Below are positions 1,032 through 39,949 of a DNA stretch of 62,767 nucleotides, one piece after another (positions within the stretch are counted from its first letter, which is position 1; each line of letters starts with the position of its first letter). The DNA is from Guillardia theta CCMP2712 (taxonomy: Eukaryota > Protista > Cryptophyta): NCBI RefSeq assembly GCF_000315625.1, contig NW_005434613.1:278457-341223 (forward strand). Reading direction: 5' to 3'. The notes under the pieces are model-generated. The model did no database searches. It saw only the letters and a program-made list of their open reading frames with translations, and was not told where the DNA came from. The position numbers were made by a program, and so were the translations under genes.

Positions 1032-4474
<3,443 letters not shown>

Positions 4475-6100: not shown

Positions 6101-6379
6101 TGACGAAGATGGCGAGAGAGGAGACGATGAGAAGGAGGAGGATACAGCTTGTTGGTTGAGAGACGGAGAGATTGGGAGATCATAGGTCAATCGAATTGAG
6201 GGAACTTTACATCCATTGGAGCAGGTGCAAGACTGGATTCAAAAACATCGTATGCCATTTCAATGAGATCACTACGATCGCCATTCGATGTTGTAGCTAG
6301 AAACATACATTGTGGCTGGATCTTCTCCCTATTGCAGTGATGGGGATTGTTGAATTCCTCATTCGTGCGTGAAAGAGAG

Positions 6380-9300
6380 ATGAAGAAAATGAAAAAACGC
6401 GAGGTATTGTCGTTGCTCTGCATCTTGCTTGTACACAAATCCCTGCAACAGAGTGACTGCAACAGCAAGAGAACTGATACCAGCTGTACCAATCTTGGCT
6501 GTACATGGGTTGAAGGCAATATTCCCCCCTGTATCGATTCAACCACTCCACAGACTACCCCTTCACCTGACTCCTCTTCGTCAAAGCACAACCATTCTTT
6601 GAATTCAACAAATTTGGCTGCAGCAGATCCATGCGGTCCAGGCTTCTATGGAGAGGACGGTGGTCCATGCTATCCTTGCGAGGTAGGAACGTACAAGTCG
6701 GTCTTCGGGTCTCAGAACTGTAGCGTGTGTCAGATGAATCAAACTACAATTAACGTTTCAGCAACGAATGTATCTTTATGTGTGTGTATGAAAGGATTCT
6801 TTCGAACAGAGGATAATCTCTGCGAATTGTGTCCAGCTGGAAAGTACAAGAATGCATCAGGAAATTTCCCGTGCTTTGACTGTCCAGGAAATTCTACTTC
6901 TTTTGGCAGCCGAGACAATATCAGTACGTGCGAATGCACAAAATATTTTAGTGGACAAAATGGTGGATATTGCACAAAGTGCAAATACGAGAAAGCAGAA
7001 GATGCTAAGGGGTCGGATCCTTGTCCTGCTTGCTACCCGAATGCAATCCAAATCACACGGGGAGACAACCAGTCGATTTGCATCTGCAAGGAAGGCTACC
7101 ATGGTCAAGATGGAGTGGGTTGTAAGAAGTGTCCCGAGGGAACATACAAGTCAGTCACAGGCAATGCCTCTTGCTCTCAATGCCCGAAGTATGCTACATC
7201 GGACCCTGCCAGCACAGGTATCCTTGACTGTAGTTGTGACAAGGGGTATACCGGAAATGGCTCCGTAGCCTGCGAAGCATGTCCTGCAGGCACTTACAAA
7301 GATGCCGTAGGCTCAGGACCTTGTCTCAACTGTACGTTCGCGTCGGTATCAGACAGCGGGAGTGCTCGATGTCAATGCATTGAAGGATACACCAGCACAG
7401 AGTCAAAAACTTGCCAAATGTGTGAGAGTGGAAAGTACAAGAGCCAAGTCAGTAACCGCAAGTGCAGTGATTGTCCTAGTCATTCCACGTCTCCTGTTGG
7501 AAGCTCTCTCAAGTCAAATTGTTCTTGTCTCGCCGGATACGCATACGTGGATGGCAAGGACTGTAAAGCTTGTTCTCCAGGCACGTACAAGGCCGATCAA
7601 GGCAACGGGCAGTGCTTGCCTTGTCCTCAAAACCAGAGCTCTAATTCCGCTTCGACTTCCTGCACCTGCAAGAAAGGATACACTAAGGTGAACAACGAGT
7701 CTCTCTGCTTGCCCTGTGATGTTGGTAAGTACAAAGCAACCTTGGGTACAGACTCTTGCACTGAGTGCCCGGTGAATTCAACTACGGCTGCTGAAGGCAG
7801 CTCTGAAGTGAATCAGTGCATTTGTAGCAATGGATACACCATCAGTGCAAACAAGTGCATGAAGTGCAACCAAGATGAATACATCTCGAATGGCTCATGC
7901 TTCTCTTGCCCTGCTAACACCTTCAGCTCAGGTCTGACCATCGGAGTGAAGAGTTGCACATGCCCCGCTGGCTACTTCATTTCAAATTATTCAAATGTAA
8001 CAAATTCATTCAATTGTACATCATGTCCATCTGGAACTTACAATGATATGAGCGGACAGACGCACTGTCAGGCTTGCTTTGAGCATGCTACCTCCTACCT
8101 GGGTAGTGTGAACATCAGCTTCTGTCAGTGCGGCAGGGGGTTTGACTATTCCAATTTCACGTGCTCGCCGTGTGCGGTTGGGAAGTACAAAGATAAAGTT
8201 GGTAACGTGCAATGCAGCTCATGTCCAGAGAACAAGACTTCTCTGAAAGCCAGCACCAACATATCAGAGTGTATCTGCAAAGCAGGATATTCGCCAGAGG
8301 CCTTGGGATCCTGCATAGCATGTCCGGAGGGAAAATACAAGAGTGATCCGGGCCCTTCTGCATGTGAGCCTTGCCCATACAATTCCATCGCTCCGACAGC
8401 GAGTGATAAGTGCAGCCGATGTGCGAAAGGAACATATCGTGAGTTTCCAACGTCTCAAGTTTGCAAACCTTGCGGAGGGTCCAATGCGATTGCTTGTTTG
8501 TTCGACATTACGGGTGTTCAGCCACAATCTTGCTCAACATCTGGAGGTATCAAAATCCTTTTCAATGTTCTTGGTCTTGCAAAATCACAAAAGGTGGAAT
8601 GGGTACAGTTCCCCCCTAACAATTCACAACCGGTTCCTGTAAAAAAGATGTCAAAAACTCTTTTGTCTGCCGAATGTCCTGCAACTTCATTCCAGGGCAC
8701 CGATTTCGGTTTCTTGTTGGACTCAAAATTCCAGCGCCTCGCTAAGTTTTCATTCACATACAATTCTCCTATTCCTATCGTCTCTCCTTCAGCTGTCTTG
8801 ACGTCGTCCCAAGAACAGCTCAATGTCACCTTCTTCTCCTGGCCTTCAGGATTTCCGTCACGATGTTCCATTTACATCGGAACCCGCAATCTGTGGAATT
8901 ACTCTGGTTTTGTCGAAACGTCGAACTCTCTCTTCGTTTATGGAAGGACGCCTGCTATAAGCACTGCTCACACGCGATCCATCTTCTTTGAATGCGATGG
9001 TAAATATGATCCCACAGGAGGATACTTGACCGTCCTGGCATCGCCAGTGTTGCAAGATTTGAAATTCGGCAATGCAGATTGCAGCATTGTGAAGAGCTGC
9101 ACGTTGCAAGCTGTTCTAAGGAATATACCTTCCTCTTTCAATCAGCAGAGTGGCTTGGTTGTGGTAATTTATGGTCCTGGCGAGGAAATTCTGTTTTCCA
9201 ACGCCCGTGGAAATTTGCACCTCAGGTAATATAGGAATGTCTGCTATGAAGCTGACATGTGTGTTTCGATGAAGGTCTTGTCTTCTGACTCAGAAAAGCT

Positions 9301-12300
9301 AGCCATTGAGATCTTGATTCCTCCTTTGCTCAGGGCCGTGCAGACCAAGATCAGGATCGCCAGCAATGCTTCTGCCAACCTTGGCTTGCAAAGCTTCGAT
9401 TTCGAGAGGAATTTCTCTATCCCGCAGCCGGAGGCTCAAGTCTCATCCATCTCACCGTCTGAGCTGCCGTACAGCAAGTCGTCCAAGGTCAAAATGCACT
9501 TGACAGGCTTCCCTGTCTTGTCCAATGCTGGAGATTTGCAACTGAAAGTAGGAAGCAACTCGTTCTCTGTGACTGAGATTGTTTTCTCCGATATCTTTGG
9601 TGAGTCATGGACCGTCAGTTCACTTCCAATTAGTTTTGACCACTGTTCCGCAGGCAGTTCGGTTGTCGCGGTAGTATCGAGCAACATCCCAACATTGGAG
9701 ACTTTGACAGTGTCTCACAGCGACAAATCAGCGAGCATCGATGTATTGTTCTTCTCTGAAACAACAACGGCTGTATGCTTGAAAGGATGCATCGCTTCCG
9801 TGACAACGGCCAACGTCATTGAGATCCAACTCGCCGGATTCCCCCCGTCGCTCGCAGCTTCAAGTTTCAGCTTTACCTTTGGAAACACTTCGACAGACGT
9901 CAAGGAGCTGGTGGCCGCCGGTCAGAAATACCTCGTGAAGCTCGAGGTCCCTTCGCTCGCCCCGCAGTCGCAGCCGCGTCAGACTTATTTCTTGAGAGCA
10001 GCAGTCAAGCAAGACGCAAGCATCGCAGGTTTTGCTAACTTCACTCTCGTCCGATCGCCTCGGTTGACCGCCGCGACCTTCAACGGTTTCGGGTCGCATG
10101 TCAACCTTGACTTTGATCAGAACACAAACGCGCCGTTGGGCCAAGTCAATTGCACGTCAGTGGTGGCAGCAACCAACTTGTCTTCCCTCGGTCACGGATA
10201 TCAGTGTTACTGGCTCAGCCCCAACCAGCTCAAGGTCATCCTCGGAGGGGACGCCTCGCTCCTGCCCACAGACACTCTCACCTTCATCGGGCGCGTGAGC
10301 GACTTCGCCGGCATCTCCAGCACCGATGGGGTTGAACAGTCAGTTGTTGTGGGTGTTCCGAGCTCTTTGCCGACTCCGAAGATCACTTTGAGTGGACCGA
10401 ACCAGGTCTCGTACTGTGAGGAGGCGGTGCTGCTAGCAAACGTGGACTCCCCTCGGAAGGCAGCATTCAGCTGGACTGTTGTGAACGATGTTGCCCTCAA
10501 CAGCCTTGTAGCGAATGTTTCCGGTCCGGTCTTGACTTTGACCCCCGCCATGCTGCAAACGGGGATGACTTACAACCTCTCTGTTTCGGTCTTGACCTTT
10601 GTTGGGGCATCTGCGACCTCTTCGATTCAGAGTCTGTTCGTGAGCGCCAACCCGATCCCAACGCTCTTCATCGTCGCTCCTCCCTCCCCGTACGTTCGGC
10701 CCAACTCAATCTTCTTTGCCTCCCAGGCGACTTTCTCCCCGTGTGACACCAGCAAGGGAAAGCTCGACCTCTCTTGGGAGATCTCTCTTGCTGGTACGAG
10801 CATCCTTGCAGGAGAAGGTCCGTTCTTCGAAGTCAAAACCACTGACCTTGTCCCCGGCACCCAGTACACCTGCATATTGACTGGATACACTGCCCAGGGA
10901 GACATCTTGACGACTCAGGTTCCAGTGAGCATCCGGTATGCAGGGCCGAACGCCAAGGTTGAGGGAGGTAACCGAACGATCTCGCTGAAAGACGACGTGA
11001 CTCTCAACGCCTCGACGTCTCAAGATTTGGACACATGCAAAGGAGTCGTCCAAAACCAATCCTGCTCTTCATATCCTCTTGCCTTCCAGTGGTCATGCTA
11101 CCTATGTGGCAATCCCTGTAGGTCAGTCAACGGCACGCTTGTCGAGCTGCCGGCATTGCCTGCGTTTGTGTACAACTTCCAGAACCTGGACTTGTCGGCA
11201 TGCAGCGTCGTCCAGGCGCAAGTGCAGGTGTCGTCCGGGTCACAGATCGATGTCGCTTCCGTGTACCTGAACGTGACGAGCGCGCTGGTTCCAGGAGCAC
11301 AGATCCGGGTCGTGAGCGAGGACACTTTCATGGTCTCGCTGAAGGGGTCGTGCAGCCTCGCGTGCTCGCAGTACCGGTGGTCGATCTCTGACTCCAAGGG
11401 CAACGTCCTGGTGGGGTACTCATCTGCAGCTGAGAATCCGAACATTCCAGCTGGGATCAACGCGATGGAACTGCTGGTCTACCGCTCCTTCTTCACAGCG
11501 GGCACGTACACAATCCAGCTCTTGGCCACGAGCGGTGAGATCTCGGGGAGCGCGACCAAGTCGCTGTACATCTCCCTCCCTCCGTCCGGGGGCCAGTGCA
11601 CTGTCTCGCCGACGACAGGAGCTGCACTGACCGACACCTTCACGTGCTCGTGTGAGTACTGGACATCGGCCGCCATGCCTCTCTCCTACGTGTTTGCCAT
11701 CAGCCCCAACGGTCAAGGTTCCCAGGTGTCGTTGAGCGCTCCGTCCAGCTTGACCTCCTACTCCTTCTCGCTTCCAGCTGGAGTCTACCTGGTCCATGCG
11801 CAGGTCATAGACAGCGACGGAAACGTGGCGGTGTCCCAGTCAACTTCCATCAAGGCCGTGGAAGTTGCTGTGGTTGTCAATGCTTCCTCCCTTAGCGGCT
11901 CTCAGCTCGGTGACGTCAGCACCGTCATCAACAACATGAACAATCTCGGGAGCGTCTCGCAGATCCTGCAGCTGAGCTCGGGATTCGCAAGCAGCCTGGC
12001 AGGAGGGGGAGGAGCAAGGAGGAGGCTGCTAGCGTCGTCCCTCGCATACAGGATGAGGATGCGAAGTCTCCTGCTTCACTCCATGGCGAAAGGCTCCGTG
12101 CAATCTTCCATGAACGGGAGGACTGCCACGTCCGCCCTGTCCACGAGCTTCAAGCTGAGCGATCAGCCCTCGGAGGTTGACGTCTCGGCCCTGTCGGACT
12201 CAAGTCAGGTCGTCGGCTCCTGCGCGAGCTTCCTCAAGGCTAGCGACTTGCGGCAGGGGTCGTTTGCCAGCCTCTTTGCGACTGAGGACAAGATCTTGCA

Positions 12301-13405
12301 GGCGTCGAAGAGTTTCAACGGAACTCTCAAGGAAGTCACAATGCTAACTGTCGTCAAAGTGCTCCTGCAGGCCAGCGACGTCTACCTGACGTCGATGGTG
12401 CCGTCAGAGCAGCCAGTCTCCTTCTCTTCCTCCAACATGAAGATGATGACCCTCCGGCTCAGCCCCGACCTGCAGCTCTACAACTTCTCCACCTGGACTT
12501 ACTCGTTCGACCTGTCGTTTGCCAAACCCGATGGCGAGCTCCTGCTTCAGAGCGGAGACCTTGGGCTGTACGTGTTGGAGATGTACTCGTTCTGGAGCAT
12601 GGACCAGCTGCATGCTCTGCAGTACATTCATGTCTCTCAGAGGCCCATCCTACTCCATCCCCTCAACCCAAGTCAACCCTCGGCAACCTCTGCCTTTCAA
12701 TGCTTGCCCAAGGGCTCTCTCTGCCTCAAGTTGAGACTTTCTTTCCCTCGGGTGCAAGTCAACGGTACCGGCAACTACCTTGTCGACCTCAGACTTCAGC
12801 TTGCGTGCGTCTTGTGGACCACCGACGTCAGCTCCTGGTCCTTCGATGCCTGCGAGCTGTCATCCCTGAAGGAGGAGAACCAGACGTTTCTCTCTGCTAC
12901 CTGTGCATGCTCCAGGTCCGGCACCCTTGTCGTGGTGCAGAACCTAAGGCATTCGGAGATCAACCCGGCGCTGGGGCTGATGCCGAAGAAGAGGCAGGTT
13001 GGAGAATGGCCCGTCGTGACCACCTCACTCTTCGCACTGCTCTCCTTCTTCCTTGTCGCGCTTGTGATGTTCAGGAACAACAGCCTGAACAGCTTCTTGG
13101 ACGAGCGGAATGAGCCCAGCAACGGGATTCAGCATGAGTTTCAGACGCTCATCGGAGATGTAGTGTTCGGAACCCTCGGCAACGAGGAGAAGAAACAGAT
13201 TCCGAGCATGACCACCTCACACTACAAGAAGGAGTACTCGAGGTTGCACGACGACTACTTGGACGACATCTGTCAGAGCAAGAACTTTTATCACTCCATC
13301 TGGTTCAAGGAGGGAGTCTTTTGTAAGACCCTTAGGAAGTTCGACTCAAAGGGCATTAGGAGGAAGAAGTGCAAGGTGCCTGACACGTCTTACAAGCTGA
13401 CTTGA
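6380..13405 (+). CDS. Giant cell-surface protein A: signal peptide, GCC2/GCC3 (ephrin-receptor-like) Cys-rich repeats, IPT/TIG-like, REJ/PKD-like, GPS-like domain, one TM
   Basis: ORFs 6347-9229 and 9257-13405. Repeats of C..GTYK...G...C..CP...C.C..G(Y/F); REJ motifs EGGNRT..LNASTSQDLD..FQWSC and PPSGGQCTVSPTTG..FTCSC..W..PLSY; GPS-like CVLW..W...C...CAC; TM WPVVTTSLFALLSFFLVALVMF. The junction phase near 9225/9275 is unresolved. Confidence 0.8.
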
Positions 13406-25290: not shown

Positions 25291-25499
25291 TGAGTAGCTG
25301 CCATGGAAACTCGTTACATTATAGCGGAGAACAGTTGGGTTGAGTGAATGTGTCGACCAATAGTCTACGCAGTTCGCTCAAAATGATTTCAGTGGGACTT
25401 TCCCCGGATTCGACAATGAAACATTCACTGTAGCCATAGAAGCGATGTACGCAGGTTGGTTCAGAGGAGGTGCCATCTCACTCTAACTCTTTGCTGTTC

Positions 25500-26222: not shown

Positions 26223-29200
26223 ATGGTTGTGCTTCATTCCACAACTTTGATGCCGATGTCACTGCGGTTTCAAATGAGGCCTTTGGTCGTGGCTTTATTG
26301 TCAATGTACATGCATATACCAGGAGTTGTCACTACGCCGTGTGACGACTATTGTAATACCATCTCGTTGAAGACTGCTTGTCTTCAATGCATGATCAGTA
26401 ACACTGTTGCAAACTGTTTTTGCTATTGGAAAGATGCAGGAAAGTCCGGGAATAGTGCTTGTTCCGAAGCAAGTGGTTGCACTTGTCCATCCAATTCAGG
26501 TGGATCTTTTTGCGCGTGCAACTCCGGATACGTCAGCAATGGCGGAACGTGTACTGAGGCAGGCTGTGGAAACTTGCTACAATGTCTTCCAACCCAAAGC
26601 AGCTGTGCGATTACGAACGCAGATTCATCTTGCAATTGTACAGCAGGTTACACACTATCAGGTACAGCTTGTATTGCTTGTGGATCAGGAACGTATAAGT
26701 CGAGTGCGGGCTACCAAGCTTGCACAAGTTGTCCTATAAATTCGATCTCTCAGCCAGCAAGTGTCAGTTTGACCAACTGTTCATGTAATGCTGGATATTA
26801 TGGGCCATTGGGCGGACCTTGTACTCCATGTGACTCTGGGAAATATAAAAACGAATTGGGTTCAGCAGGTTGTGTGAGTTGCCCAGAAAACTCCTTCTCA
26901 GTGTCAGGTTCGAATATCAGCGGCTGCTTATGCAATAAAGGTTACACTGGCTACAATGGAGGCACTTGCCTTGCTTGCCCCCAGGGTACGTATAAAAACA
27001 CTTCGGGATCTGCACCGTGCTCAAGCTGTCCCGTATTGTCAACATCCAGCGAAGGCAGCGTCAATATTTCCTTGTGCAAGTGTAATTCTGGAGCATATGG
27101 TAACGACGGTTCAAGCTGTGTTGCCTGTGAGCCAGGCACGTACAAAGATGCTATTGGCTCCAACAATTGCACCAAATGCCCACAATTCAGTACCTCAAAT
27201 GCTTCCAGCGTGTCAAAAGATTTGTGCTATTGTGTTGTAGGGTATGAGTATTCCTCAGGATCCTGCACCGCTTGTCCGATGGGAAAATATAAATCGAACA
27301 TTGGAAATTTTAACTGTAGCAGTTGCCCGGACAATTCCACCACGATCAATGAAGCCAGTCCAGCTGCAAGCAACTGCACTTGCATGGCAGGGTTTTTCGG
27401 TCCACAAGGTGGAACATGTCAGCCTTGTCCACCAGGCACTTTTAAAACTACCCCAGGATCACATGCCTGTATGTCTTGCTCAGATTCAGAAATTTTGAAT
27501 TCCACAGATGGTCAACCAACATGCGAGTGTAATATTGGATATTTTCGAAATCTTTCAGGACTTTGTGACGCCTGCCCGGAAGGATACTATAAGAGTATGG
27601 TCGGAAACTATGACTGCACTCCTTGTCCTCCTAACTCAACGTCGTCTAGAGGAAGCAAAGCTTATTCTGATTGTCTCTGTAATTCTGGTTTTACTTCTGT
27701 CGAAGGCTTGGAATGCACTCCATGTGCGGCTGGAACATTCAAGAAATTGATTGGATTTTCAACTTGCATACCTTGTCCTTTGAATTCATATTCGTCTGCA
27801 GCAAGTATATTATGTCAATGCAACGCGGGATACATTGACAACGGAAACGATAGCTGTATTGCATGCCAAGCAGGGAAATATCGAAGTGCTGATTTGCTAA
27901 ATTGTACAGATTGCCCTGGAAATCTTACCTCTGATTTGGGAAGCTCGTCTATTGAACAGTGTACTTGTGATTCTGGCTCGTATTACTCCATCGATGGATT
28001 CTGTAAATCATGTGAAGCTGGAAAATATAAAGCGTTTCCAGGAAAGGATGACTGCATGACGTGTTCAGCCAATTCAACATCAAATCCAGGAGCCATTGCT
28101 TGCGTTTGCAAAGAGGGATATACACCTGTCAATGAACAATGTGTGGCATGTGATACGAACACATACAAAGACATCATCGGAAATCTTTCTTGTAACCTTT
28201 GTCCAAACACCATGATCTCAAATTTTGGAAGCATTTCCGTCAACGATTGTCAATGTGCTCCAGGATACACAAGCACACAGAATCAAAACTGCACCAAATG
28301 CATAGCAAACACGTACAAGAGCGAGGCAGGGTCGGCCACCTGCACGGCCTGTCCGGGCAACGCCAGCAGCCCGCCAGGCAGCGACGCGGTCGAGGCGTGC
28401 AGGTGCAACGCGGGCTACACGGGGCAGGACGGCGGGGAGTGTAGGGCGTGCGAGGCGGGGACGTACAAGAGCGAGGCAGGGTCGGCCAACTGCACGGCCT
28501 GTCCGGGCAACGCCAGCAGCCCGCCAGGCAGCGACGCGGTCGAGGCGTGCAGGTGCAACGCGGGCTACACGGGGCAGGACGGCGGGGAGTGTAGGGCGTG
28601 CGAGGCGGGGACGTACAAGAGCGAGGCAGGGTCGGCCAACTGCACGGCCTGTCCGGGCAACGCCAGCAGCCCGCCAGGCAGCGACGCGGTCGAGGCGTGC
28701 AGGTGCAACGCGGGCTACACGGGGCAGGACGGCGGGGAGTGTAGGGCGTGCGAGGCGGGGACGTACAAGAGCGAGGCAGGGTCGGCCAACTGCACGGCCT
28801 GTCCGGGCAACGCCAGCAGCCCGCCAGGCAGCGACGCGGTCGAGGCGTGCAGGTGCAACGCGGGCTACACGGGGCAGGACGGCGGGGAGTGTAGGGCGTG
28901 CGAGGCGGGGACGTACAAGAGCGAGGCAGGGTCGGCCACCTGCACGGCCTGTCCGGGCAACGCCAGCAGCCCGCCAGGCAGCGACGCGGTCGAGGCGTGC
29001 AGGTGCAACGCGGGCTACACGGGGCAGGACGGCGGGGAGTGTAGGGCGTGCGAGGCGGGGACGTACAAGAGCGAGGCAGGGTCGGCCAACTGCACGGCCT
29101 GTCCGGGCAACGCCAGCAGCCCGCCAGGCAGCGACGCGGTCGAGGCGTGCAGGTGCAACGCGGGCTACACGGGGCAGGACGGCGGGGAGTGTAGGGCGTG

Positions 29201-32200
29201 CGAGGCGGGGACGTACAAGAGCGAGGCAGGGTCGGCCACCTGCACGGCCTGTCCGGGCAACGCCAGCAGCCCGCCAGGCAGCGACGCGGTCGAGGCGTGC
29301 AGGTGCAACGCGGGCTACACGGGGCAGGACGGCGGGGAGTGTAGGGCGTGCGAGGCGGGTTTGTTCAAAAATCGAAGTGGTTTTTTCTCGTGCGTCAATT
29401 GTTCAGCTGGTTTTTTTTCAACCTCGATTGGTTCTTCATTTTGTTTTGCTTGTGAACCTGGCAAGTATAAACCTGATCCTGGTCCGGGAACTTGCAGTGA
29501 TTGCTTGGAAAACTTCACCACTGTGTCTGGTGCAACTGGATTGATAAATTGTCAATGTAAAAGGGGATATACGGGTCTGGATGGTGGAGATTTCTGTGTT
29601 GCCTGTTCCATTGGACAATACAAAGAAAACACGGGTTCTGGTGCATGCATAATTTGTCCTGTGGGAAAATTCAATATTCAAGAAGCGGCCTCCACGTGCA
29701 ACCTTTGCCCTATTGCGACATATAAGGATTTCACTGGAGTAGGTCTGTGTGTTGATTGTCCAGGAAATTTTACGAGCAACAAGGGGAGCACCAACATCAC
29801 AGATTGCAAGTGCATACCTGGATACACTGGTAATGACGGTGAAGTTTGTTATCAGTGTCCCATCGGAACGTATAAAAACATCAGGGGCTCAGCTTCTTGT
29901 CAACAATGTGAAGTTGGAACATATCAAACAATGACAGCAATGACTGTATGTTTAAAATGTGATGCTGGAAAATACAAAAATCAAACAGGCAGCGGGCTCT
30001 GTGCCGAATGTAATGAAGGAACATTTACAATTCAGAAAGGGCAAACCACCTGTGAAATGTGTCCACCATCAACATACAAAGATTGGATTGGAGCAGGAAC
30101 GTGCAAAAACTGTCCGCTATCATCTACAACGACAGAAGGAGCAACAACTATCCTAAACTGCGAATGCAACAAAGGATATACAGGAAACAACGGAGAGTTA
30201 TGTATTGAATGTCAAGAGGGAAAATATAAATCAACAATTGGACCCTTTAACTGTACATCTTGTCCGGGCAACGCCAGCAGCCCGCCAGGCAGCGACGCGG
30301 TCGAGGCGTGCAGGTGCAACGCGGGCTACACGGGGCAGGACGGCGGGGAGTGTAGGGCGTGCGAGGCGGGGACGTACAAGAGCGAGGCAGGGTCGGCCAC
30401 CTGCACGGCCTGTCCGGGCAACGCCAGCAGCCCGCCAGGCAGCGACGCGGTCGAGGCGTGCAGGTGCAACGCGGGCTACACGGGGCAGGACGGCGGGGAG
30501 TGTAGGGCGTGCGAGGCGGGGACGTACAAGAGCGAGGCAGGGTCGGCCACCTGCACGGCCTGTCCGGGCAACGCCAGCAGCCCGCCAGGCAGCGACGCGG
30601 TCGAGGCGTGCAGGTGCAACGCGGGCTACACGGGGCAGGACGGCGGGGAGTGTAGGGCGTGCGAGGCGGGGACGTACAAGAGCGAGGCAGGGTCGGCCAA
30701 CTGCACGGCCTGTCCGGGCAACGCCAGCAGCCCGCCAGGCAGCGACGCGGTCGAGGCGTGCAGGTGCAACGCGGGCTACACGGGGCAGGACGGCGGGGAG
30801 TGTAGGGCGTGCGAGGCGGGGACGTACAAGAGCGAGGCAGGGTCGGCCACCTGCACGGCCTGTCCGGGCAACGCCAGCAGCCCGCCAGGCAGCGACGCGG
30901 TCGAGGCGTGCAGGTGCAACGCGGGCTACACGGGGCAGGACGGCGGGGAGTGTAGGGCGTGCGAGGCGGGGACGTACAAGAGCGAGGCAGGGTCGGCCAC
31001 CTGCACGGCCTGTCCGGGCAACGCCAGCAGCCCGCCAGGCAGCGACGCGGTCGAGGCGTGCAGGTGCAACGCGGGCTACACGGGGCAGGACGGCGGGGAG
31101 TGTAGGGCGTGCGAGGCGGGGACGTACAAGAGCGAGGCAGGGTCGGCCAACTGCACGGCCTGTCCGGGCAACGCCAGCAGCCCGCCAGGCAGCGACGCGG
31201 TCGAGGCGTGCAGGTGCAACGCGGGCTACACGGGGCAGGACGGCGGGGAGTGTAGGGCGTGCGAGGCGGGGACGTACAAGAGCGAGGCAGGGTCGGCCAA
31301 CTGCACGGCCTGTCCGGGCAACGCCAGCAGCCCGCCAGGCAGCGACGCGGTCAAGGCGTGCAGGTGCAACGCGGGCTACACGGGGCAGGACGGCGGGGAG
31401 TGTAGGGCGTGCGAGGCGGGGACGTACAAGACTGAGGTTGGTCTTGGCAATTGTCGGAATTGTCCTGTCAATCTTACCAGTTCTCCTGGTAGTGTTTCTG
31501 TGAAGGGTTGTTTTTGTGATGTTGGGTGGTTTTCGATTAATGTGTCGGTACAAAACTTTTGTTTTGTTTGTCCGGTGGGTACTTTTTCGAATATTTCTTC
31601 TTCGTCTCACTGTTTGGATTGCCTTCCTGGTTCATATTCTTCCACATTCGGTTCGTCCAATTGTAGGTCATGTTTAGCTGGACACTTTCAGGATGAATCT
31701 GGCTCAACGTTTTGCAAACGTTGCTCTCACAATCGGACAAGTGGAATTGGAAGTTCATCGTTAGAGCATTGCAAGTGCCTTCCAGGCTTTTCTGATATCA
31801 ATGGTTCTCATTGCGATCAATGTCCATCGGGAATGTTTCAACCTCACATTGGTGCTTCGCAGTGTATGAGTTGTGATGCTGGATCATTCCAATCGCTTCC
31901 TGGACAGACGTACTGTGAATGTTGTCCACCAGGAACTTTCCAAAATTCATCAGGTGGTCATTCCTGCTTGCCGTGTGAGGAGGGAAAATACAACGATAAG
32001 AGCAATCAGACATTCTGCCAAAATTGCGCAGCAGGATATTACAAGAATTGGACCGGAGAAGGAGAATGCACTGAATGCAAAGAAAATACAACATCCAAAA
32101 TCGGGAGCAAAATTGAATCAGATTGCAAATGTAAGCCAGGTTATGAAAGAACAAACAATACATGTCAACAATGCAAAACGAATTATTACAAAAATACGCT

Positions 32201-35200
32201 TGGAGACACCTTGTGCGAACAATGTCGAGAAAACATGCAAAGCACTCAAGGGAGCGACGCGGTCGAGGCGTGCAGGTGCAACGCGGGCTACACGGGGCAG
32301 GACGGCGGGGAGTGTAGGGCGTGCAAGGCGGGGACGTACAAGAGCGAGGCAGGGTCGGCCAACTGCACGGCCTGTCCGGGCAACGCCAGCAGCCCGCCAG
32401 GCAGCGACGCGGTCGAGGCGTGCAGGTGCAACGCGGGCTACACGGGGCAGGACGGCGGGGAGTGTAGGGCGTGCGAGGCGGGGACGTACAAGAGCGAGGC
32501 AGGGTCGGCCAACTGCACGGCCTGTCCGGGCAACGCCAGCAGCCCGCCAGGCAGCGACGCGGTCGAGGCGTGCAGGTGCAACGCGGGCTACACGGGGCAG
32601 GACGGCGGGGAGTGTAGGGCGTGCGAGGCGGGGACGTACAAGAGCGAGGCAGGGTCGGCCACCTGCACGGCCTGTCCGGGCAACGCCAGCAGCCCGCCAG
32701 GCAGCGACGCGGTCGATGCGTGCAGGTGCAACGCGGGCTACACGGGGCAGGACGGCGGGGAGTGTAGGGCGTGCGAGGCGGGGACGTACAAGAGCGAGGC
32801 AGGGTCGGCCAACTGCACGGCCTGTCCGGGCAACGCCAGCAGCCCGCCAGGCAGCGACGCGGTCGAGGCGTGCAGGTGCAACGCGGGCTACACGGGGCAG
32901 GACGGCGGGGAGTGTAGGGCGTGCAAGGCGGGGACGTACAAGAGCGAGGCAGGGTCGGCCACCTGCACGGCCTGTCCGGGCAACGCCAGCAGCCCGCCAG
33001 GCAGCGACGCGGTCAAGGCGTGCAGGTGCAACGCGGGCTACACGGGGCAGGACGGCGGGGAGTGTAGGGCGTGCGAGGCGGGGACGTACAAGAGCGAGGC
33101 AGGGTCGGCCAACTGCACGGCCTGTCCGGGCAACGCCAGCAGCCCGCCAGGCAGCGACGCGGTCAAGGCGTGCAGGTGCAACGCGGGCTACACGGGGCAG
33201 GACGGCGGGGAGTGTAGGGCGTGCGAGGCGGGGACGTACAAGAGCGAGGCAGGGTCGGCCACCTGCACGGCCTGTCCGGGCAACGCCAGCAGCCCGCCAG
33301 GCAGCGACGCGGTCAAGGCGTGCAGGTGCAACGCGGGCTACACGGGGCAGGACGGCGGGGAGTGTAGGGCGTGCAAGGCGGGGACGTACAAGAGCGAGGC
33401 AGGGTCGGCCACCTGCACGGCCTGTCCGGGCAACGCCAGCAGCCCGCCAGGCAGCGACGCGGTCGAGGCGTGCAGGTGCAACGCGGGCTACACGGGGCAG
33501 GACGGCGGGGAGTGTAGGGCGTGCAAGGCGGGGACGTACAAGAGCGAGGCAGGGTCGGCCAACTGCACGGCCTGTCCGGGCAACGCCAGCAGCCCGCCAG
33601 GCAGCGACGCGGTCGAGGCGTGCAGATGTAATTTTGGGTTTTTTGGTCAATTCGATTCTGTTTGTACTCCATGTTTTCCCGGTACGTATAAATCTGCTTT
33701 GGGATCACAGGCTTGTTCAAATTGTCCATCTCATTCAACAAGTGGCTTGGCCTCCACTAAACGTTCGGATTGTGCTTGTGTTCCTGGATTTTTTTCATCG
33801 TCCATTGGCTCAGATCTGACATGCAGTCCTTGTTTTACTGGCACGTACCAAGATAAGTCTGGATATTCATTTTGTTTCACTTGTCCTCACAATTCTTCTT
33901 CTTTGGAGGGCAGTTCAAGTCTTGACAAATGTCTCTGCAAGCCCGGATATTTTGGGCCACCTGAAAACTGCATTGAATGTCCTTTTGGTACATTCAAGAA
34001 TACTTCAGGCTCTTTCGAATGTTTCAATTGTCCTCCGTTCTCATATTCCGATAAGGGTGCAACAGATGTTACAGCGTGCAAATGTAATCTTGGATTCTAC
34101 AGGGGTGGTAATGATTTGTCATGCATTGCATGCAAAGTTGGAAAATACAAGGACTTTCTTGGTGATCAGAGTTGCACTGCATGTCCAACGTATTCGACCT
34201 CTTCGACAGGCAGTGTAAATGCAAAAGATTGTACTTGCATCGAGGGCTATTTTGGACCCCCTGGCGGACCTTGTATTCAGTGTGGTTATGCAAAGTACAG
34301 CGATGCTCTGGGATCATCAACCTGTACAAGTTGTCCTGATAATTCGTGGGCTCCGCAAGCAAGTGCACGAAGATCTGCTTGCATGTGTATCGCGGGGTAC
34401 ACTGGTCAAGATGGTGGACCATGTAATGCATGTCCCGAAGGAAAACACAAAGAATCCAATGGCTCAACACCGTGTTCATCATGCAGCCATCTTGCCACAA
34501 CCATCTGGAATGCTTCGCAAGAGATTTGCCTGTGCAATGCCGGCTACACTGGTTCAAACAACATGTGTATGGCTTGTTCCCCAGGCAAGTACAAAAACAC
34601 CATAGGATCAGGTGATTGTCTTGCATGTCCTGCTCACACCATCTCGTTGAATGCAAGCAGCGATGTAGCACAATGCATTTGTTCTCCAGGTTACTTCCAG
34701 AAGAATGGTCAATGTATGCCATGCAGTTTCGATACGTACAAAGCAGTGGCAGGTAACGGAGAATGTGCCATGTGCCCGGTGAATTCTGGCACATTATCCG
34801 ACGGAAGTCACTCGATTGACCAATGCTTTTGTAAGCCAGGCTATTTCGGATCGAATGAAGCTTGCTCAGCTTGCCCCGCTGGGACGTATAAGACATTGTT
34901 GGGTACTTCAGGGTGTTCGATCTGTGAGAACTTCACAACCTCGAATCCTGGCAGTGTTTCAATCAGTGATTGTGTATGTATAGAAGACTACTTTCTTGAA
35001 AACATGCAATGCAAACCGTGTTTACCCGGCAGTTATAAGAATGTAAGTGGAAACGGACCTTGCACTTCTTGTGATAAGTTGTGGTCGGTCAAGTGCTTGC
35101 CTGTGATCAAATCGGTCAACCCTCAATTTTGCGAAGCGGAGGGTGGAAGCATGGTGTACTTTGAGCTTAGTTCTGGTGCAAATCAGATCTCTTGGATACG

Positions 35201-38200
35201 TTTTTCAGAAACCCAGACACGTTCCACTGCAACGTTCTTGAGTCCGACTTTGATTGCTGCGATATGTCCTGCTTCAGATGGAAAATTCGGAGCGACTTTA
35301 GGGTTACTTCTTGCTTCAGATCTTCAGCCAATTTCAAGATTTTCATTTTCTTACTTGACTCCAAGGCCAATCGTTTCTCCCCAAAATATCTTGAGAAACG
35401 GGACTGTAGTCAATGCAACGTTTTCTTTCTGGCCAGAAGGATTCCCGAAATCGTGCGGATTGTCATTCGGACCAGGATCTGACTGGGATTACCATGTTAT
35501 GAAAATGGACACAATTTACCGCGCAAGTGGTCTCCTCAGAATTCTCATAAAATCAGCCCAGGCACAGCTCAGCTTCAATTGTAGTGGTCAGTTGATTGAT
35601 ACACGGGTTGTGGTCAACGTTTTTGACAATATGGTAGTTTCTAACATTATCAATCGGAATGGAAAATGTACAATCACAAGCAGATGTAGTCTATCTATCG
35701 TTGTCTCCAATCCCTCTCCCATGTTGCAAGCAGGAAACATAGCAGTCAGCATTCACGGCACAAAGTACTCCACCAGCTTTGAAGGCCCTCAATATTCCAT
35801 CTTGACGCAGGTACGTGCATTTGTTTTCCCTAGATAGCAGATTTTGAATGACTCTTTGTAAAACAGGTACAGGAAGCCCAAAGCGATTATGCAATTGTTA
35901 CTATCGATATTCCTCCCTTGCTTTCATTCGATACTTTCATCTGTACGATGCATCCCACAAGTTTCTACCAAGATCCAGTCATGGATCAGATCGCTTCATT
36001 TAATCTTCCAATTGCAATACCGGCTGCTGAGATTCTGAGCATTTCTCCTTCGTCAGGACCGATTTTGACAGAGACCGTCGTCTTGATCGTACTGAGTTCC
36101 TTTCCAATCGCTGCAGACTTCAAAGTGACGGTAGCAGGGAATTTAATGCCCAAACCTGAAGTACAATTTGCAGATGAATCAGGGATATCTTTGAAGGTAT
36201 CATTGTATTCTGAGCAATCCGGAATTCAAAACGTCATCGTATCATCCTCTGGAATATCGGCAAACACGAGTTTCCTTAGCTTGATGCCTCAATTTAAAGC
36301 AAATTGTTTAGGAAATTGTTACATTGTAGACTGGGCTGAGACAGAGCTTCAAGTTGCGGTATATGGCTTTCCCATAGAATTGAACCATTCAATTTGGATT
36401 GTACAGGGAACAGAAAAAACAAGATCTTCTGTCTCTGCATCTGTCCCCGACAATGGAGCCAACATACTATATGTACAAGTTTCTTTTTCGGATGCTCTCG
36501 AGAATGCCTATGATACAACTTGTTTTCGTGTTTCACAGACTCATTTTGATTACAATGCATTTTTTTGCACTCAGTCTTACAGGAAGCCTCGCATAAGTCG
36601 CTTGAATTTCAACAATTTGGGAAACAGCCTGAGCATAACTTTCGATCAGGTTGTGGATATCAGCTCAGAGATTAATGATTGTGCAAAGTATTTCCCAAAG
36701 GCTAATCTCACCAGTTTAGGAAAAGGAAGGTTGTGCTCATGGTACGATTCCTCCACGCTTCAGGTTGTATTAGGGAGTGATGCCTCAGTCATGGTATCTC
36801 AATCCTTGCTGTTCAATGGAAACCTGAGCATGATGGGAAGGCTCATTAAAAACTCAGAGGGTATGGTTGCTCGTGTTCAGCCTCCTTCTCTTGCCTCCAC
36901 ACCTTCGATCACATTGGACGGTCCCTTCGAGGTTGCCTCTTGTGATTCCGCGACAATAAGAGCGACTTGTAGCTCGTCAAGACCACCCATCTTTTCTTGG
37001 AGGATACTGAATTCCGAATTTCACACAGGATTGGTGCAAAACGTGACAGGAGACACAGTAGCTTTGAAGGGTATCTACCTTCAGTTGGGGATCAGTTACC
37101 AAATCGTTGTCACAGCTTACACATTTTTGGGGGTGTCTGTAACCAGCAAAGTTCACTTGCTTCAAAGAGCTGCTGAGCCAGTGCCCCTTGTATCTATTGT
37201 AATGCCACCTCCACCGTACAAGAGGCCAAATTCCTTCTACGTAACTGCCAAGTCTGAATTTTCTTCCTGTGCTCCAAGCAGAGCGACTCTCAACTATACC
37301 TGGTTGCTCTACAATTCACAAAGTTCCAACTCATCGATACAAGCAAAAGGTCCTGAAATGTTGATAAGCACGATGAACCTGATCCCTGGGTCTTCATACA
37401 CAATATCACTTCTGGTGCAGTCTGCCTTGAGCTCAAGTCTGGTACAGCAGACAATCACCATTGCACGTTCTGGGGTCAAAGCGCTGATAAAGGGAGGAAA
37501 TCGTACAGCCTACAGAAATCAGGCAGATTTTCTCATAGATGGATCAGCATCGTATGACATGGATTACGTGGGCATAACGGCGGGCTTGAGCTTCGAATGG
37601 ACATGTGCTGTAGGAAATGGCCCCTGTCGCTATCTAAATGGCTCAAAGTTGATCCTTCCTTACGTGCCATACCTCAACCTCAACCTCTACAGTCTGAATC
37701 TTCAAGGCACTAGTGCTTTGCAAATCACATTGATGGTGAGTAAAGGTGCATACTTCGATTCGCAAACAGTCATCTTAGAGCTCTCCGACGCCCCCGTCCT
37801 ACCAGTTGAGATATCTAGTAGTGTCAACAATCAACTGTGGGTATCTTTGAAGGCAGTGCCAGTGACAAACAACGCCAAGTATTCATGGAATGTCAAAGAT
37901 TCTGCGAATAACCTCATGAATCAAGTCTTGACCAAAAACAATGCATGCCCAGCCGGTATAGATTCATATGACCTGGTTATCTTGAACCCTTCCAAATTCT
38001 TGCCGCGCGGAAAGTATGCAATTTCCGTCGAAATGCGATATGACAATCTGGTTGGAACTGCCTCGATACCTTTCAGAGTGACATGGCCGCCCTCTGGTGG
38101 TCAATGTGCGGTCAGTCCTACCTCGGGGGTAGAGCTCGAGCAAGACTTTCAAATCAAGTGTATCTCATGGACCTCCGATGATTTGCCCTTGTCATATCAA

Positions 38201-39949
38201 TACGGCCTTGGTCGGATCGGTTCAGCAGAGATTTCTTGGACGCCTCAATCGTACTTGAACGTACACTCTGCAATCTTGACAAACGGAGATTATGGTATGG
38301 TTGCGTCGATCATCGACAATCTTGGAGGAGCTTCTCTGTCGGAAACGACGAACATCAGGGTACGGCAAAAAGAATTTGCAAATGGGACAAACTTTGAGGA
38401 CGAGCTGTTTGCAAACATTGCGAAGGCGATAGATCAGTTCAACAGCCTTGGATTGCTTGGGCAGAGTTTGCAACTTTCCAATAGTGCCCTTCTCAGTTTG
38501 CAGGAAAATCAAAATCGCCGCCTGTTGGCATCGTCCTTGGCTTATCGGATGCGTGTGAGAAACATGCTTCTTGCAAAGATGGCAGGCGGAACAGTCAACG
38601 ACAAAATGAACACCAGGACGATGTCATCATCCCTGGAGACAGTAAGCAATGCACTGCAACAACCTTCGGAAATCAGCCCGAATGGATGCTCAGACGTGGG
38701 ACAACTGTTGGGGACCTGTACGACGTTCATGACTGTTGACTTCTTGCGTGGCGATGGGATCTTTGCTTTTCTCTCTTCGTTCGACGCATACCTAATCACA
38801 GCCAAGAACTTTGACAAACCTATGAGACAAGCCTCTCTCATCTCGGTGTTGAACAACGTGCTGAATGCTTCCACGTTATTGTCGACCTCGATGGTGCAAA
38901 CTGAGCAAGCTTTTCATCAGGCCCTTGCCATGTTCACGGTGCAGGTCCAGCGGTGCGGAGTCGACCTGAGCCAAGAAGAAGTCAATCTAATGGAGCAAAG
39001 GGTGTCTGTTGATTTCGGGGCTTTCAGGGCCTTGTCAAACCTGAGAAGCCAAGACTTGTCTATCACGCTGGTTCACACGAAGGAGTTCTGGTTCTTGGAT
39101 GACTTGTACAACCTGGGCTATACTGTTGTGTCAAACCCTTCAGTCTTGTATTACCTCTACTCCCTGCCAGACCTGAAAATGGTGTGGGACTGCAAGGGTT
39201 CCGACTCGCCCTGTTTCAGCGTTCAGGTAGATATGAACCGAAGTACAGCTGAACAAGCCCATGATCTCTTGCTCAAGTGTGTGCTGTGGAACGCTCAGAG
39301 TGCAGCATGGGACTTCAAGGCCTGCACGTTGGGATCCATCTCTCTACAGGCAGAGTCAGCGACAGCCCAGTGCCTGTGCAACAGCGTGGGCTCAGCCTTG
39401 GTCATCCAAGAGAACCTGGACGCCTCCGGATTCTTCAACATCAACAACAAGTTCAACCTGCACCATATTTTTGAGTGGCTGCTCCTCACTATCATCGTTC
39501 ACTTTTGTGTGGCGACCTTCGTCGTCGTGGTCACCTTTCGTGGAACTCTCAACTCAATCCTCTCGTCCTCGTCCTTGAACACTGGCCGTCCTCACCATCG
39601 CAGGGCTTCAGACCGGAAGATGCTCTTCCTCGAGTATGAGATCAAAGGAGAGCTGGGAATGTTGCAACATGTCAAGGAACCAGGAGGGCAGGAAGAGGAG
39701 GAGCATAGACGCTCTTCTCCAGCTGAGCACAACTCAGTGAGTTGTACATGCTGCAAACTGAACAGACAGACAGTCAAGTTTTCCACGCAGGATGCTGCGG
39801 GGAGCCATGCTGTCTCCTCCTCCCCATCCCAGTGGTTTGAAGAATGCCAGGTCGTCTCGTCTCCTCACACAGTCGTCGAGCGGAGGCAGAGAATGACGCT
39901 CAGGTTTAGGAAGAGTCAAGTCGCTGAGCCCGTCATGTTGTCTGAATGA
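26223..39949 (+). CDS. Giant cell-surface protein B (~4,550 aa), paralog of protein A: signal peptide, dozens of GCC2/GCC3-type Cys-rich repeats, IPT/TIG-like, REJ/PKD-like, GPS-like, one TM
   Basis: ORF from 26223 joined by a phase-0 GT-AG intron (35811-35866) to 35867-39949 (ILTQ|VQEAQSDY..DIPPLL). Same domain order as protein A: KGGNRT..IDGSASYDMD..FEWTC, PPSGGQCAVSPTSG, RRLLASSLAYRMR, CVLWN..WDFKAC..CLC, TM WLLLTIIVHFCVATFVVVV. Confidence 0.88.
28311..29359 (+). repeat. Coding tandem array 1: 7 x 150 bp (50 aa)
   Basis: Unit TYKSEAGSA(N/T)CTACPGNASSPPGSDAVEACRCNAGYTGQDGGECRACEAG; units start every 150 bp from 28311; ~73% GC (110/150 by hand count). Confidence 0.97.
30261..31431 (+). repeat. 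Coding tandem array 2: ~7.8 x the same 150-bp unit
   Basis: Near-identical to the array 1 unit. Confidence 0.97.
32253..33625 (+). repeat. Coding tandem array 3: ~9.1 x the same 150-bp unit
   Basis: Near-identical to arrays 1 and 2, with E/K and E/D variants. Confidence 0.97.

What the first reader, a model, noticed from the sequence alone, without database searches (positions are those of the whole stretch)
28251..33690. A-rich 5' flank / T-rich 3' flank around all three GC-rich coding arrays: candidate repeat-centred strand-asymmetric mutation system
Seen (hand counts in 60-nt windows chosen near each junction): before array 1 (28251-28310) A26/T8, after (29401-29460) A7/T30; before array 2 (30181-30240) A27/T13, after (31501-31560) A11/T27; before array 3 (32141-32200) A31/T13, after (33631-33690) A9/T29. 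The arrays are ~73% GC. The flanks still encode the same Cys-repeat scaffold, but non-Cys residues shift to K/N/T/Q/E upstream and F/S/V/L downstream. Inference: on each strand, DNA 3' of the array has gained T (C->T-like), a rotationally symmetric footprint. This fits bidirectional replication initiation or recombination-dependent replication from the arrays, or methylation/deamination spreading (RIP-like). Such a process could diversify the ectodomain repeats while the core is homogenized.
Basis: partly seen in the sequence, partly recalled or inferred. Interest (0 to 1): 0.85.

Follow-up and report, generated by a model that had tools for sequence, protein, structure and literature searches.

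The report
Mirror-image A/T skew beside coding arrays
Three near-identical GC-rich repeat arrays inside a giant surface-receptor gene are each bordered by about 300 bases that are A-rich before the array and T-rich after it, even at silent codon positions, which points to a strand-specific mutation process tied to the array edges but is so far shown in one gene only.

Summary
All six hand counts are exact. Three arrays of one 150-bp unit (73% GC, GC3 92%) lie in a 3204-aa Ephrin_rec_like repeat ORF that a REJ-domain ORF follows.

The flank skew persists at silent sites:
- Pooled 4-fold sites within 240 nt are A57/T14 upstream and A25/T58 downstream; the rest of the ORF is A197/T165.
- Scaffold Gly codons are GGA20:GGT1 upstream and GGA9:GGT15 downstream.
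- The downstream silent-site composition matches the complement of the upstream one (p=0.25).
- The skew fades within about 270-360 nt.
- Jumps across the arrays give z = 1.8, 5.0 and 3.7 against 407 control positions.

All six junctions continue the flanking repeat register, so the arrays are homogenised tracts within an older repeat series, not insertions.

Three readings are not supported:
- RIP-like or methylation spreading: RIP indices are negative and CpG depletion is unchanged.
- RNA pairing between the flanks.
- A replication origin: the range is too short.

Best reading (about 0.45): strand-asymmetric single-strand DNA damage or repair synthesis linked to the recombination that homogenises the arrays. 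The sign fits synthesis running out of the arrays, or breaks in the unique DNA, rather than breaks inside the arrays.

I could not test other arrays of this genome. I found no precedent in the literature.

The parts
26223..35837 (+). Uninterrupted 3204-aa ORF made of Cys-rich Ephrin_rec_like (GCC2_GCC3-type) repeats; it holds the three arrays and all six flanks
   Evidence: ORF list and translation. Pfam PF07699 at E 3e-64, 6e-43, 5e-59 and 2e-16 on four pieces.
28311..29360 (+). Array 1: 7.0 copies of the 150-bp (50-aa) unit, 73% GC; one G-quadruplex motif per unit on the coding strand
   Evidence: TRF period 150, 99% matches. Junctions read. G4 motifs.
30261..31431 (+). Array 2: 7.8 copies of the same unit
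32253..33626 (+). Array 3: 9.2 copies of the same unit
28041..28310 (+). Upstream flank of array 1: A-enriched and T-depleted on the coding strand (the weakest of the six flanks)
   Evidence: 4-fold A18/T7 over 240 nt. In the top 1% of 233 control windows.
29361..29630 (+). Downstream flank of array 1: T-enriched, with T6 and T8 runs and many Phe codons
   Evidence: 4-fold A9/T18, Y-ending 2-fold C8/T22. Sequence. T runs.
29991..30260 (+). Upstream flank of array 2: strongly A-enriched
   Evidence: 4-fold A26/T3. Beyond all 233 control windows.
31432..31701 (+). Downstream flank of array 2: strongly T-enriched
   Evidence: 4-fold A4/T23, Y-ending C4/T24. Beyond all control windows.
31983..32252 (+). 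Upstream flank of array 3: A-enriched
   Evidence: 4-fold A13/T4, R-ending 2-fold A21/G3. Beyond all control windows.
33627..33986 (+). Downstream flank of array 3: T-enriched, fading over about 360 nt
   Evidence: 4-fold A12/T17, Y-ending C3/T26. Profiles.
35918..39949 (+). Next ORF, 80 nt downstream: REJ-domain part, probably the next exon of the same receptor gene (the join is inferred)
   Evidence: Pfam PF02010 REJ, E 2.4e-40.
6347..13405 (+). Older paralogous pair (an Ephrin_rec_like ORF plus a REJ ORF) without arrays; used as control coding DNA
   Evidence: Pfam. 35-39% and 30% aa identity to the array-bearing gene. No comparable skew jumps.

Best explanation
The three arrays are homogenised tracts inside an older series of diverged Cys-rich repeats in a REJ-type receptor gene. 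Ongoing unequal exchange or gene conversion within and between the arrays keeps the units near-identical. That homogenisation has probably driven them to 92% GC3 through GC-biased conversion.

The same recombination or repair traffic reaches about 300 nt into the unique coding DNA on either side. There, one particular strand is repeatedly left single-stranded: the strand that runs 5'->3' away from the array. Damage on that strand (loss of C and A) is copied into T-rich sequence. The coding strand therefore becomes T-rich downstream and, by complementarity, A-rich upstream.

The bias is strong enough to reshape silent sites, and also the amino-acid make-up: K/N/T/Q/E upstream, F/V/S downstream.

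Shown: the symmetric skew at silent sites, its range, the homogenisation, and the in-register junctions.
Inferred: that the skew is mutational, that single-strandedness is the cause, and which repair intermediate supplies it. Candidates are repair synthesis primed in the array and running outward, or breaks in the AT-rich unique DNA whose resection runs toward break-poor arrays.
For: - Silent-site skew at 4-fold sites, 2-fold sites and scaffold Gly/Cys codons, independent of neighbouring A/T runs.
- Rotational symmetry of the full four-base composition.
- Graded decay over 270-360 nt, and a T-rich to A-rich gradient across both inter-array spacers.
- All three arrays show the same sign, with z up to 5 against control coding DNA.
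- The two spacers are colinear paralogs at only 31% aa identity, and the flanks contain no recent internal duplications. The silent-site skew therefore cannot have been inherited by duplication and must be generated locally.
- The arrays are recombinationally active. 21 full units differ at only 4 columns, variants are shared between arrays, and GC3 is 92% against about 30% G+C at 4-fold sites in the flanks.
- All six junctions continue the flanking repeat register.
- Every unit carries a G4 motif on the coding strand, and none lie elsewhere in the ORF. That is a plausible cause of stalling or breakage.
- Precedent for the kind of process: at human meiotic break hotspots the resected flanks carry strand-asymmetric mutations in which the single-stranded strand loses C and A, with BIR-type asymmetry of the opposite polarity further out (PMC7615360). 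Here the coding strand downstream of the arrays loses A and C.
Against: - Only one gene, with three arrays that share one unit. No other array of this genome could be fetched.
- No polymorphism or ancestral states, so substitution directions are inferred from composition alone.
- If breaks were centred in the arrays and the human single-strand signature applied, the sign would be the reverse of what is seen. The model therefore needs outward synthesis or break-poor arrays, and neither is shown.
- The range (about 0.3 kb) is shorter than human resection tracts (1-2 kb).
- The dominant A<->T exchange is not the classic deamination spectrum.
- Selection acting on DNA or chromatin would also touch silent sites and is not excluded.
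- There are no expression, break, single-strand or replication data. The RNA run gave 0 reads from a 6% sample, which is no test.
Confidence: 0.45

Rival explanations
1. Selection on the DNA or chromatin itself: oriented A-rich and T-rich borders act as polar poly(dA:dT)-like barriers that confine nucleosomes or recombination to the GC-rich arrays. The spacers then read T-rich ... A-rich, like the nucleosome-depleted regions described in yeast (that comparison is from my own knowledge and was not looked up here).
For: Selection on DNA would affect silent and non-silent sites alike, as seen. The layout is mirror-symmetric. The GC-to-AT edges are razor-sharp.
Against: It needs weak selection on hundreds of coding sites at the cost of changing the protein. 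Long homopolymer tracts are few: six T runs of 5-8 and three A runs of 5. No chromatin data exist.
Confidence: 0.12
2. Transcription-linked asymmetry: R-loops seeded by the G-rich coding strand of the arrays expose the non-template strand downstream, making it T-rich. Antisense transcripts starting in the CpG-rich arrays do the mirror image upstream.
For: There is one G4 motif per unit on the coding strand only, GC skew of +0.2 in the arrays, and CpG o/e of 1.03, which is island-like. The downstream effect is the steeper and stronger one.
Against: Sense transcription alone predicts T-richness, not A-richness, in the upstream flank. No antisense or internal start site is known. The RNA run gave no reads. 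Three divergent promoters inside one ORF would be unusual.
Confidence: 0.12
3. Chance or history: these flank repeats happen to have A-rich or T-rich codon usage, for example through protein-level preferences plus local context effects, with no link to the arrays.
For: Only six flanks in one gene. Array 1's jump is modest (z about 2). Downstream flanks 1 and 3 are only at the 9% and 22% tails for 240-nt 4-fold windows. Compositional heterogeneity exists elsewhere in the window.
Against: All six flanks have the predicted sign. Combined z is about 5-6. The effect is seen at scaffold Gly codons and at 4-fold sites next to G/C. It decays monotonically with distance from the edges. No comparable jump occurs in about 12 kb of control coding DNA, which includes an array-free paralog.
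Confidence: 0.1
4. Each array is a bidirectional replication origin, and the lagging-strand template on each side accumulates T.
For: The sign of the A/T jump matches origin-type skew jumps. G>C downstream of arrays 1 and 2 in the raw profile.
Against: The skew vanishes 270-360 nt from the edges, also on the outer flanks where forks would travel on. It would require three origins within 5.3 kb of one ORF. GC skew at silent sites is weak: U G10/C12, D G23/C16.
Confidence: 0.06
5. RIP-like or methylation-driven C->T deamination spreads from the repeats into their flanks.
For: The flanks are slightly more AT-rich than the rest of the gene at 4-fold sites: 76% and 68% against 66%.
Against: The repeats themselves are unmutated, at 73% GC with CpG o/e 1.03. 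Flank TpA/ApT is 0.44-0.48 and (CpA+TpG)/(ApC+GpT) is 1.25-1.61, both opposite to the high TpA/ApT and low substrate index that I recall as typical of RIP-mutated DNA (thresholds from memory, not looked up here). CpG o/e in the flanks equals that of the far gene body. The shift is largely A<->T.
Confidence: 0.02

Closest known systems
Strand-asymmetric mutagenesis around meiotic double-strand-break hotspots (Hinch et al. 2023, PMC7615360)
   Same: A mirror-image mutational footprint on the two sides of a recombination-active site, attributed to single-stranded DNA and re-synthesis. The exposed strand loses C and A, as the coding strand does downstream of the arrays here.
   Different: The human case is seen as rare variants around PRDM9 sites over 1-2 kb, not as a fixed compositional footprint. 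Here the centre is a coding tandem array and the range is about 0.3 kb. The sign is opposite to that of a break in the centre followed by resection. A<->T exchange dominates.
Break-induced replication / migrating D-loop synthesis with strand-coordinated ssDNA mutation
   Same: A nascent strand growing away from the invasion site stays single-stranded, which gives the polarity seen here if invasion occurs in the arrays.
   Different: BIR tracts run for kilobases to whole chromosome arms. Nothing here shows BIR, and the range is a few hundred bases, closer to short repair-synthesis tracts.
Replication-origin skew jumps (bacterial oriC; human N-domain borders)
   Same: An upward jump of T-over-A skew across a point, and a linear return between neighbouring points, as in the two spacers.
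   Different: The scale is smaller by 3-5 orders of magnitude, there is no persistence on the outer flanks, and the G/C component is weak.
Concerted evolution of coding minisatellites with GC-biased gene conversion
   Same: Near-identical units within and between arrays, variants shared between arrays, GC3 of 92% against AT-rich unique flanks, and sharp tract ends at arbitrary unit phases.
   Different: GC-biased conversion is strand-symmetric and does not predict an A|T polarity in the flanks.
RIP and RIP leakage in fungi
   Same: A repeat-associated mutation process that can spill into adjacent unique DNA.
   Different: The defining features fail here: the repeats are intact and GC-rich, there is no TpA excess, and the changes are not transition-only.

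Membership tests
DSB-hotspot ssDNA mutational asymmetry (PMC7615360) | [quoted passage not shown] | tested here: met
   At the level of composition only: the downstream 4-fold composition equals the complement of the upstream one (p=0.25), and differs from it directly (p=4e-9).
DSB-hotspot ssDNA mutational asymmetry (PMC7615360) | With the break at the centre, the forward strand loses C and A to the LEFT of it (that is the resected 3' tail) | tested here: not met
   The coding strand loses A and C to the RIGHT of each array and loses T and G to the left. The arrays therefore cannot be the break centre under this signature (legend read).
DSB-hotspot ssDNA mutational asymmetry (PMC7615360) | The footprint spans the resection tract (1-2 kb in human) | tested here: inconclusive
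   The range here is 270-360 nt. Resection length in this organism is unknown.
DSB-hotspot ssDNA mutational asymmetry (PMC7615360) | Mapped breaks or ssDNA-bound DMC1/RAD51 at the site | not testable with these tools
   No such data are available.
Replication origin with skew jump | T>A and G>C on the strand leaving the origin, on both sides | tested here: inconclusive
   The A/T part is met. At silent sites G/C is U G10/C12 and D G23/C16, which is weak.
Replication origin with skew jump | The skew persists over replicon-scale distance | tested here: not met
   It returns to baseline by about 360 nt on the outer flanks.
RIP / RIP leakage | The repeated copies themselves carry C->T / G->A mutations and become AT-rich | tested here: not met
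   The arrays are 73% GC, have CpG o/e 1.03 and are 99% identical.
RIP / RIP leakage | High TpA/ApT and low (CpA+TpG)/(ApC+GpT) in the affected DNA | tested here: not met
   The flanks give 0.44-0.48 and 1.25-1.61.
Concerted evolution with GC-biased conversion (arrays only) | Units are near-identical within and between arrays, and variants are shared between arrays | tested here: met
   There are 4 variable columns in 21 units. The N/T variant occurs in all three arrays.
Concerted evolution with GC-biased conversion (arrays only) | A fixation bias toward G/C seen in polymorphism or divergence | not testable with these tools
   Only the end state is visible: GC3 of 92% against about 30% G+C at 4-fold sites in the flanks.
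Ephrin_rec_like (PF07699) repeat protein with REJ domain (PF02010) | Pfam matches above the gathering score | tested here: met
   PF07699 scores 60-213 bits against a cut-off of 23.1. REJ scores 139 bits against a cut-off of 25 in the next ORF. That the two ORFs form one gene is inferred.

The most novel reading that the evidence does not exclude
This genome has a repeat-edge mutator. Recombination that homogenises coding tandem arrays routinely leaves the outward-running strand single-stranded for about 300 nt, and so writes a fixed, mirror-image A|T footprint. The footprint drives rapid, directional amino-acid change in the neighbouring ectodomain repeats while the core stays uniform. It would be a compositional record of repair-tract polarity that can be read from sequence alone.
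Probability: 0.2. Interest if true: 0.85.

Novelty: new variant of a known kind. Interest (0 to 1): 0.6.

Why it matters
Strand-asymmetric mutation around breaks, origins and promoters is known mostly from very large variant sets or from skews at the kilobase-to-megabase scale. Here a footprint of a few hundred bases is centred on array edges. It is visible in a single sequence, strong enough to give 61% A or 48% T at 4-fold sites, and strong enough to triple the Phe content of a protein segment.

If it recurs at other arrays, three things follow:
- The polarity and length of recombination or repair tracts could be read from the genome sequence of a poorly studied protist. The nearest protein relatives are cryptophytes, and related DNA occurs in freshwater metagenomes.
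- It would show that repeat homogenisation has a mutational cost, or a diversifying effect, on neighbouring coding DNA.
- It would link GC-rich homogenised cores to AT-rich diverged edges, a pattern that another first-stage note reports for a different array of this genome.

If it does not recur, it is a curiosity of one gene.

Tried and rejected
- **Terminal inverted repeats or RNA pairing between the A-rich and T-rich flanks.** Only 22-25 nt weak inverted matches were found. Flank-flank duplex energies are no better than for shuffled sequences, z = 0.03, 0.53, -1.63. Rejected.
- **Insertion of foreign GC-rich DNA at A|T target sites.** All six junctions continue the repeat register of the flanking diverged units, and no relic units lie elsewhere. 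Rejected.
- **Inheritance of the skew by duplication of an [array+spacer] block.** The two spacers are colinear but only 31% identical, so silent sites are saturated. There are no recent duplications inside the flanks. Rejected.
- **Homopolymer slippage.** The skew holds at 4-fold sites followed by G or C. Rejected.
- **RIP or CpG deamination spreading.** Rejected.
- **Other GC-rich islands in the window as replicates.** They show no consistent A|T flank pattern, but they are different kinds of element. Uninformative.
- **Replication elsewhere.** Two metagenome scans, one with the exact array 29-mer and one with a degenerate peptide pattern, found nothing. Protein searches with the array and with a spacer found no orthologs. 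Of the 120 best homologs, led by cryptophyte and metagenome proteins at 49% identity or less, none has a comparable homogenised array. A look-up of earlier findings by sequence was blank.
- **Reads.** I then asked for a part with fewer copies, as the tool advised. DNA contigs confirm both spacers and their junctions. The RNA run gave 0 reads from a 6% sample, which is no test.
- **Literature.** Four literature searches found no description of A/T polarity at tandem-array flanks.

Full report
**What is there**

The finding lies inside one uninterrupted ORF, 26223-35837 on the + strand, of 3204 aa. The ORF is built almost wholly of Cys-rich Ephrin_rec_like repeats. Pfam PF07699 scores up to 213 bits against a cut-off of 23.

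Eighty bases downstream, a second ORF (35918-39949) carries a REJ domain. The gene therefore looks like a polycystin-1/REJ-type surface receptor; that the two ORFs are joined is inferred.

An older paralogous pair without arrays lies at 6347-13405. It is 30-39% identical at the protein level and serves as control coding DNA.

The best protein relatives elsewhere are 49% identical or less. The named ones are cryptophyte proteins (Guillardia, Baffinella). Related DNA occurs in freshwater and lake metagenome runs.

**The arrays**

Three arrays of one 150-bp (50-aa) unit occupy 28311-29360, 30261-31431 and 32253-33626, with 7.0, 7.8 and 9.2 copies.
- They are 73% GC with GC3 of 92%. The flanks are 38-45% GC.
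- The 21 full units differ at only four columns. All four differences are non-synonymous, and variants are shared between arrays.
- The edges are razor-sharp and fall at different unit phases.
- At all six junctions the flanking, diverged repeat continues the register of the array unit. No relic units exist elsewhere; the best non-edge identity is about 50%, which is background.

So the arrays are homogenised tracts inside an older series of diverged repeats, not insertions. Each unit has one G-quadruplex motif on the coding strand. There are 24 in the ORF, none outside the arrays and none on the other strand.

**Check of the observation**

All six hand counts are exact. The skew is not a protein-level effect, because it is strongest at silent sites.

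| Site class | Upstream | Downstream | Rest of ORF |
|---|---|---|---|
| 4-fold, within 240 nt | A57 T14 C12 G10 | T58 A25 G23 C16 | A197 T165 C101 G86 |
| 2-fold, R-ending | A41/G8 | A11/G13 | 85/71 |
| 2-fold, Y-ending | C40/T40 | T72/C15 | 226/159 |
| Scaffold Gly, GGA:GGT | 20:1 | 9:15 | 67:42 |
| 4-fold followed by G or C | A22:T5 | A7:T35 | A94:T113 |

- For the 4-fold sites, upstream against downstream (A vs T) gives p=3.6e-10.
- The R-ending shift is confined to the upstream side and the Y-ending shift to the downstream side.
- The last row gives p=1.6e-7, so run slippage is not the cause.
- The downstream four-base composition is statistically the complement of the upstream one (p=0.25), and differs from it directly (p=4e-9).
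- The effect lasts about 270 nt upstream as a plateau and 270-360 nt downstream as a gradient, then returns to baseline. Across both inter-array spacers it runs from T-rich to A-rich through zero.

Against 407 control positions in coding DNA of this window, the upstream-minus-downstream jump has z = 1.8, 5.0, 3.7 at third positions and 2.2, 4.2, 2.3 at 4-fold sites. The three upstream flanks are all in the top 1% of 233 control windows. The downstream flanks fall at 9%, 0% and 22% for 240-nt 4-fold windows. Array 1 is the weakest.

The amino-acid shift is real. K, N, T, Q and E are raised upstream. F (9.6% against 3.2%), V, S and G are raised downstream, but not L.

**Independence**

The two spacers are colinear paralogs with the same pattern of 17-aa and 50-aa sub-units. 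They are only 31% identical, so silent sites are long saturated. The flanks contain no recent internal duplications. The skew must therefore be produced locally and repeatedly.

DNA contigs from the likely source run and from a second, older data set confirm both spacers and their junctions.

One contig of the older data set joins an array-like unit, at a fourth phase, to 30 shown letters that are absent from this window. Those letters are A15/T5 and read in frame as scaffold. This is a small hint of another A-rich 5' junction, no more.

**What it is not**

- RIP-like or methylation spreading. The repeats are intact. The flanks have TpA/ApT of 0.44-0.48, a substrate index of 1.25-1.61, and the same CpG depletion as the rest of the gene (0.62-0.66). 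The arrays have CpG o/e of 1.03.
- Paired flanks. There is no significant inverted repeat, and duplex energies are no better than for shuffled sequences.
- A simple C->T process. At 4-fold sites the main exchange is A against T, so the purine:pyrimidine ratio moves: 72% purine upstream, 39% downstream, 52% elsewhere. That needs transversion-type change as well as the transition component seen at 2-fold sites (the step to transversions is inference).

**How it most likely works**

A process with polarity relative to the array edges and a reach of about 300 nt fits repair-tract biology better than replication or transcription does.

At human meiotic hotspots the resected flanks carry strand-asymmetric mutations in which the single-stranded strand loses C and A. 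That strand is the forward strand to the left of the break. A longer-range asymmetry is ascribed to break-induced replication (PMC7615360).

Here the coding strand loses A and C to the right of each array. Under that signature, breaks centred in the arrays are excluded. The exposed strand is the one running 5'->3' away from the array. Two routes supply this:
- (a) Repair synthesis primed inside an array and running outward, which leaves a nascent single strand.
- (b) Breaks in the AT-rich unique DNA whose resection runs toward break-poor arrays. This creates a net strand bias only near the hot/cold border, and a linear gradient across the spacers.

Both routes are inference. The assumption that the human damage spectrum applies to this organism is also untested.

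The homogenisation, the extreme GC3 and the G4 motifs make the arrays plausible centres of recombinational repair.

**Rivals**

- A replication origin fits the sign but not the 0.3-kb decay on the outer flanks.
- Sense transcription with R-loops explains the downstream side only.
- Selection for polar A/T barriers in chromatin cannot be excluded.
- Chance is unlikely given six of six signs and the control tests, but the sample is one gene.

**Limits**

- No other array of this genome could be reached.
- No homolog among 120 has a comparable array.
- The RNA run gave no reads from a 6% sample.
- Four literature searches found no precedent for A/T polarity at tandem-array flanks.
- An unchecked first-stage note reports another array of this genome with AT-rich diverged units and GC-rich identical units. 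That agrees with the core/edge contrast but says nothing about polarity.

**Verdict**

I rate it a new variant of a known kind and moderately interesting, pending a genome-wide test.

Noticed in passing
window 28440-33512 (21 full array units): Only four variable columns exist among the 21 units, and all are non-synonymous: E/K at codon 5, N/T at codon 17, E/K/D at codon 35. The N/T variant sits in an N-C-T sequon, so it would switch a potential N-glycosylation site on and off. It occurs in all three arrays.
   Followed up: partly
window 28412-33519: There is one G-quadruplex motif per unit (four G3+ runs, loops <=12) on the coding strand. That makes 24 in the ORF, with none outside the arrays and none on the other strand.
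   Followed up: partly
window 26223-35837: CpG o/e is 0.62-0.66 throughout the non-array gene body but 1.02-1.03 in the arrays. Either the arrays escape CpG loss or homogenisation restores it.
   Followed up: no
window 6347-13405 and 26223-39949: Two same-strand paralogous receptor genes (Ephrin_rec_like repeats followed by a REJ domain) are 30-39% identical. Only the second has arrays. The second also has lower GC3 outside its arrays.
   Followed up: partly
window 29361-30260 and 31432-32252: The two inter-array spacers share an unusual colinear architecture in which runs of 17-aa half-units (C-x2-C-x2-G-x-Y/F-K-x3-G-x3) are interleaved with full 50-aa units. The N- and C-terminal repeat regions lack these runs.
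   Followed up: partly
run X2 contig laid at window 31229-31298: A 163-nt contig of an older data set joins an array-like unit (3 differences in 70 nt) to sequence absent from this window. The 30 shown letters are A15/T5 and in frame. This may be another array junction elsewhere in the genome or a strain difference.
   Followed up: partly
window 25480-26020: A strongly C-skewed tract (GC skew about -0.5 over about 500 nt) lies just upstream of the ORF start. Other first-stage notes describe similar ACCC-type blocks at the 5' ends of genes in this genome.
   Followed up: no
window ~2650-3500: An assembly gap (844 N in the window) is flanked by microsatellites: (AGAGC)30 at 2068-2216 and (CTCCTGC)23 at 2343-2504.
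   Followed up: no
run X1 contigs (loose ends): Several short contigs of the likely source run end in transposase-library adaptor-like sequence next to array units. This is a library artefact and is not part of the genome.
   Followed up: no
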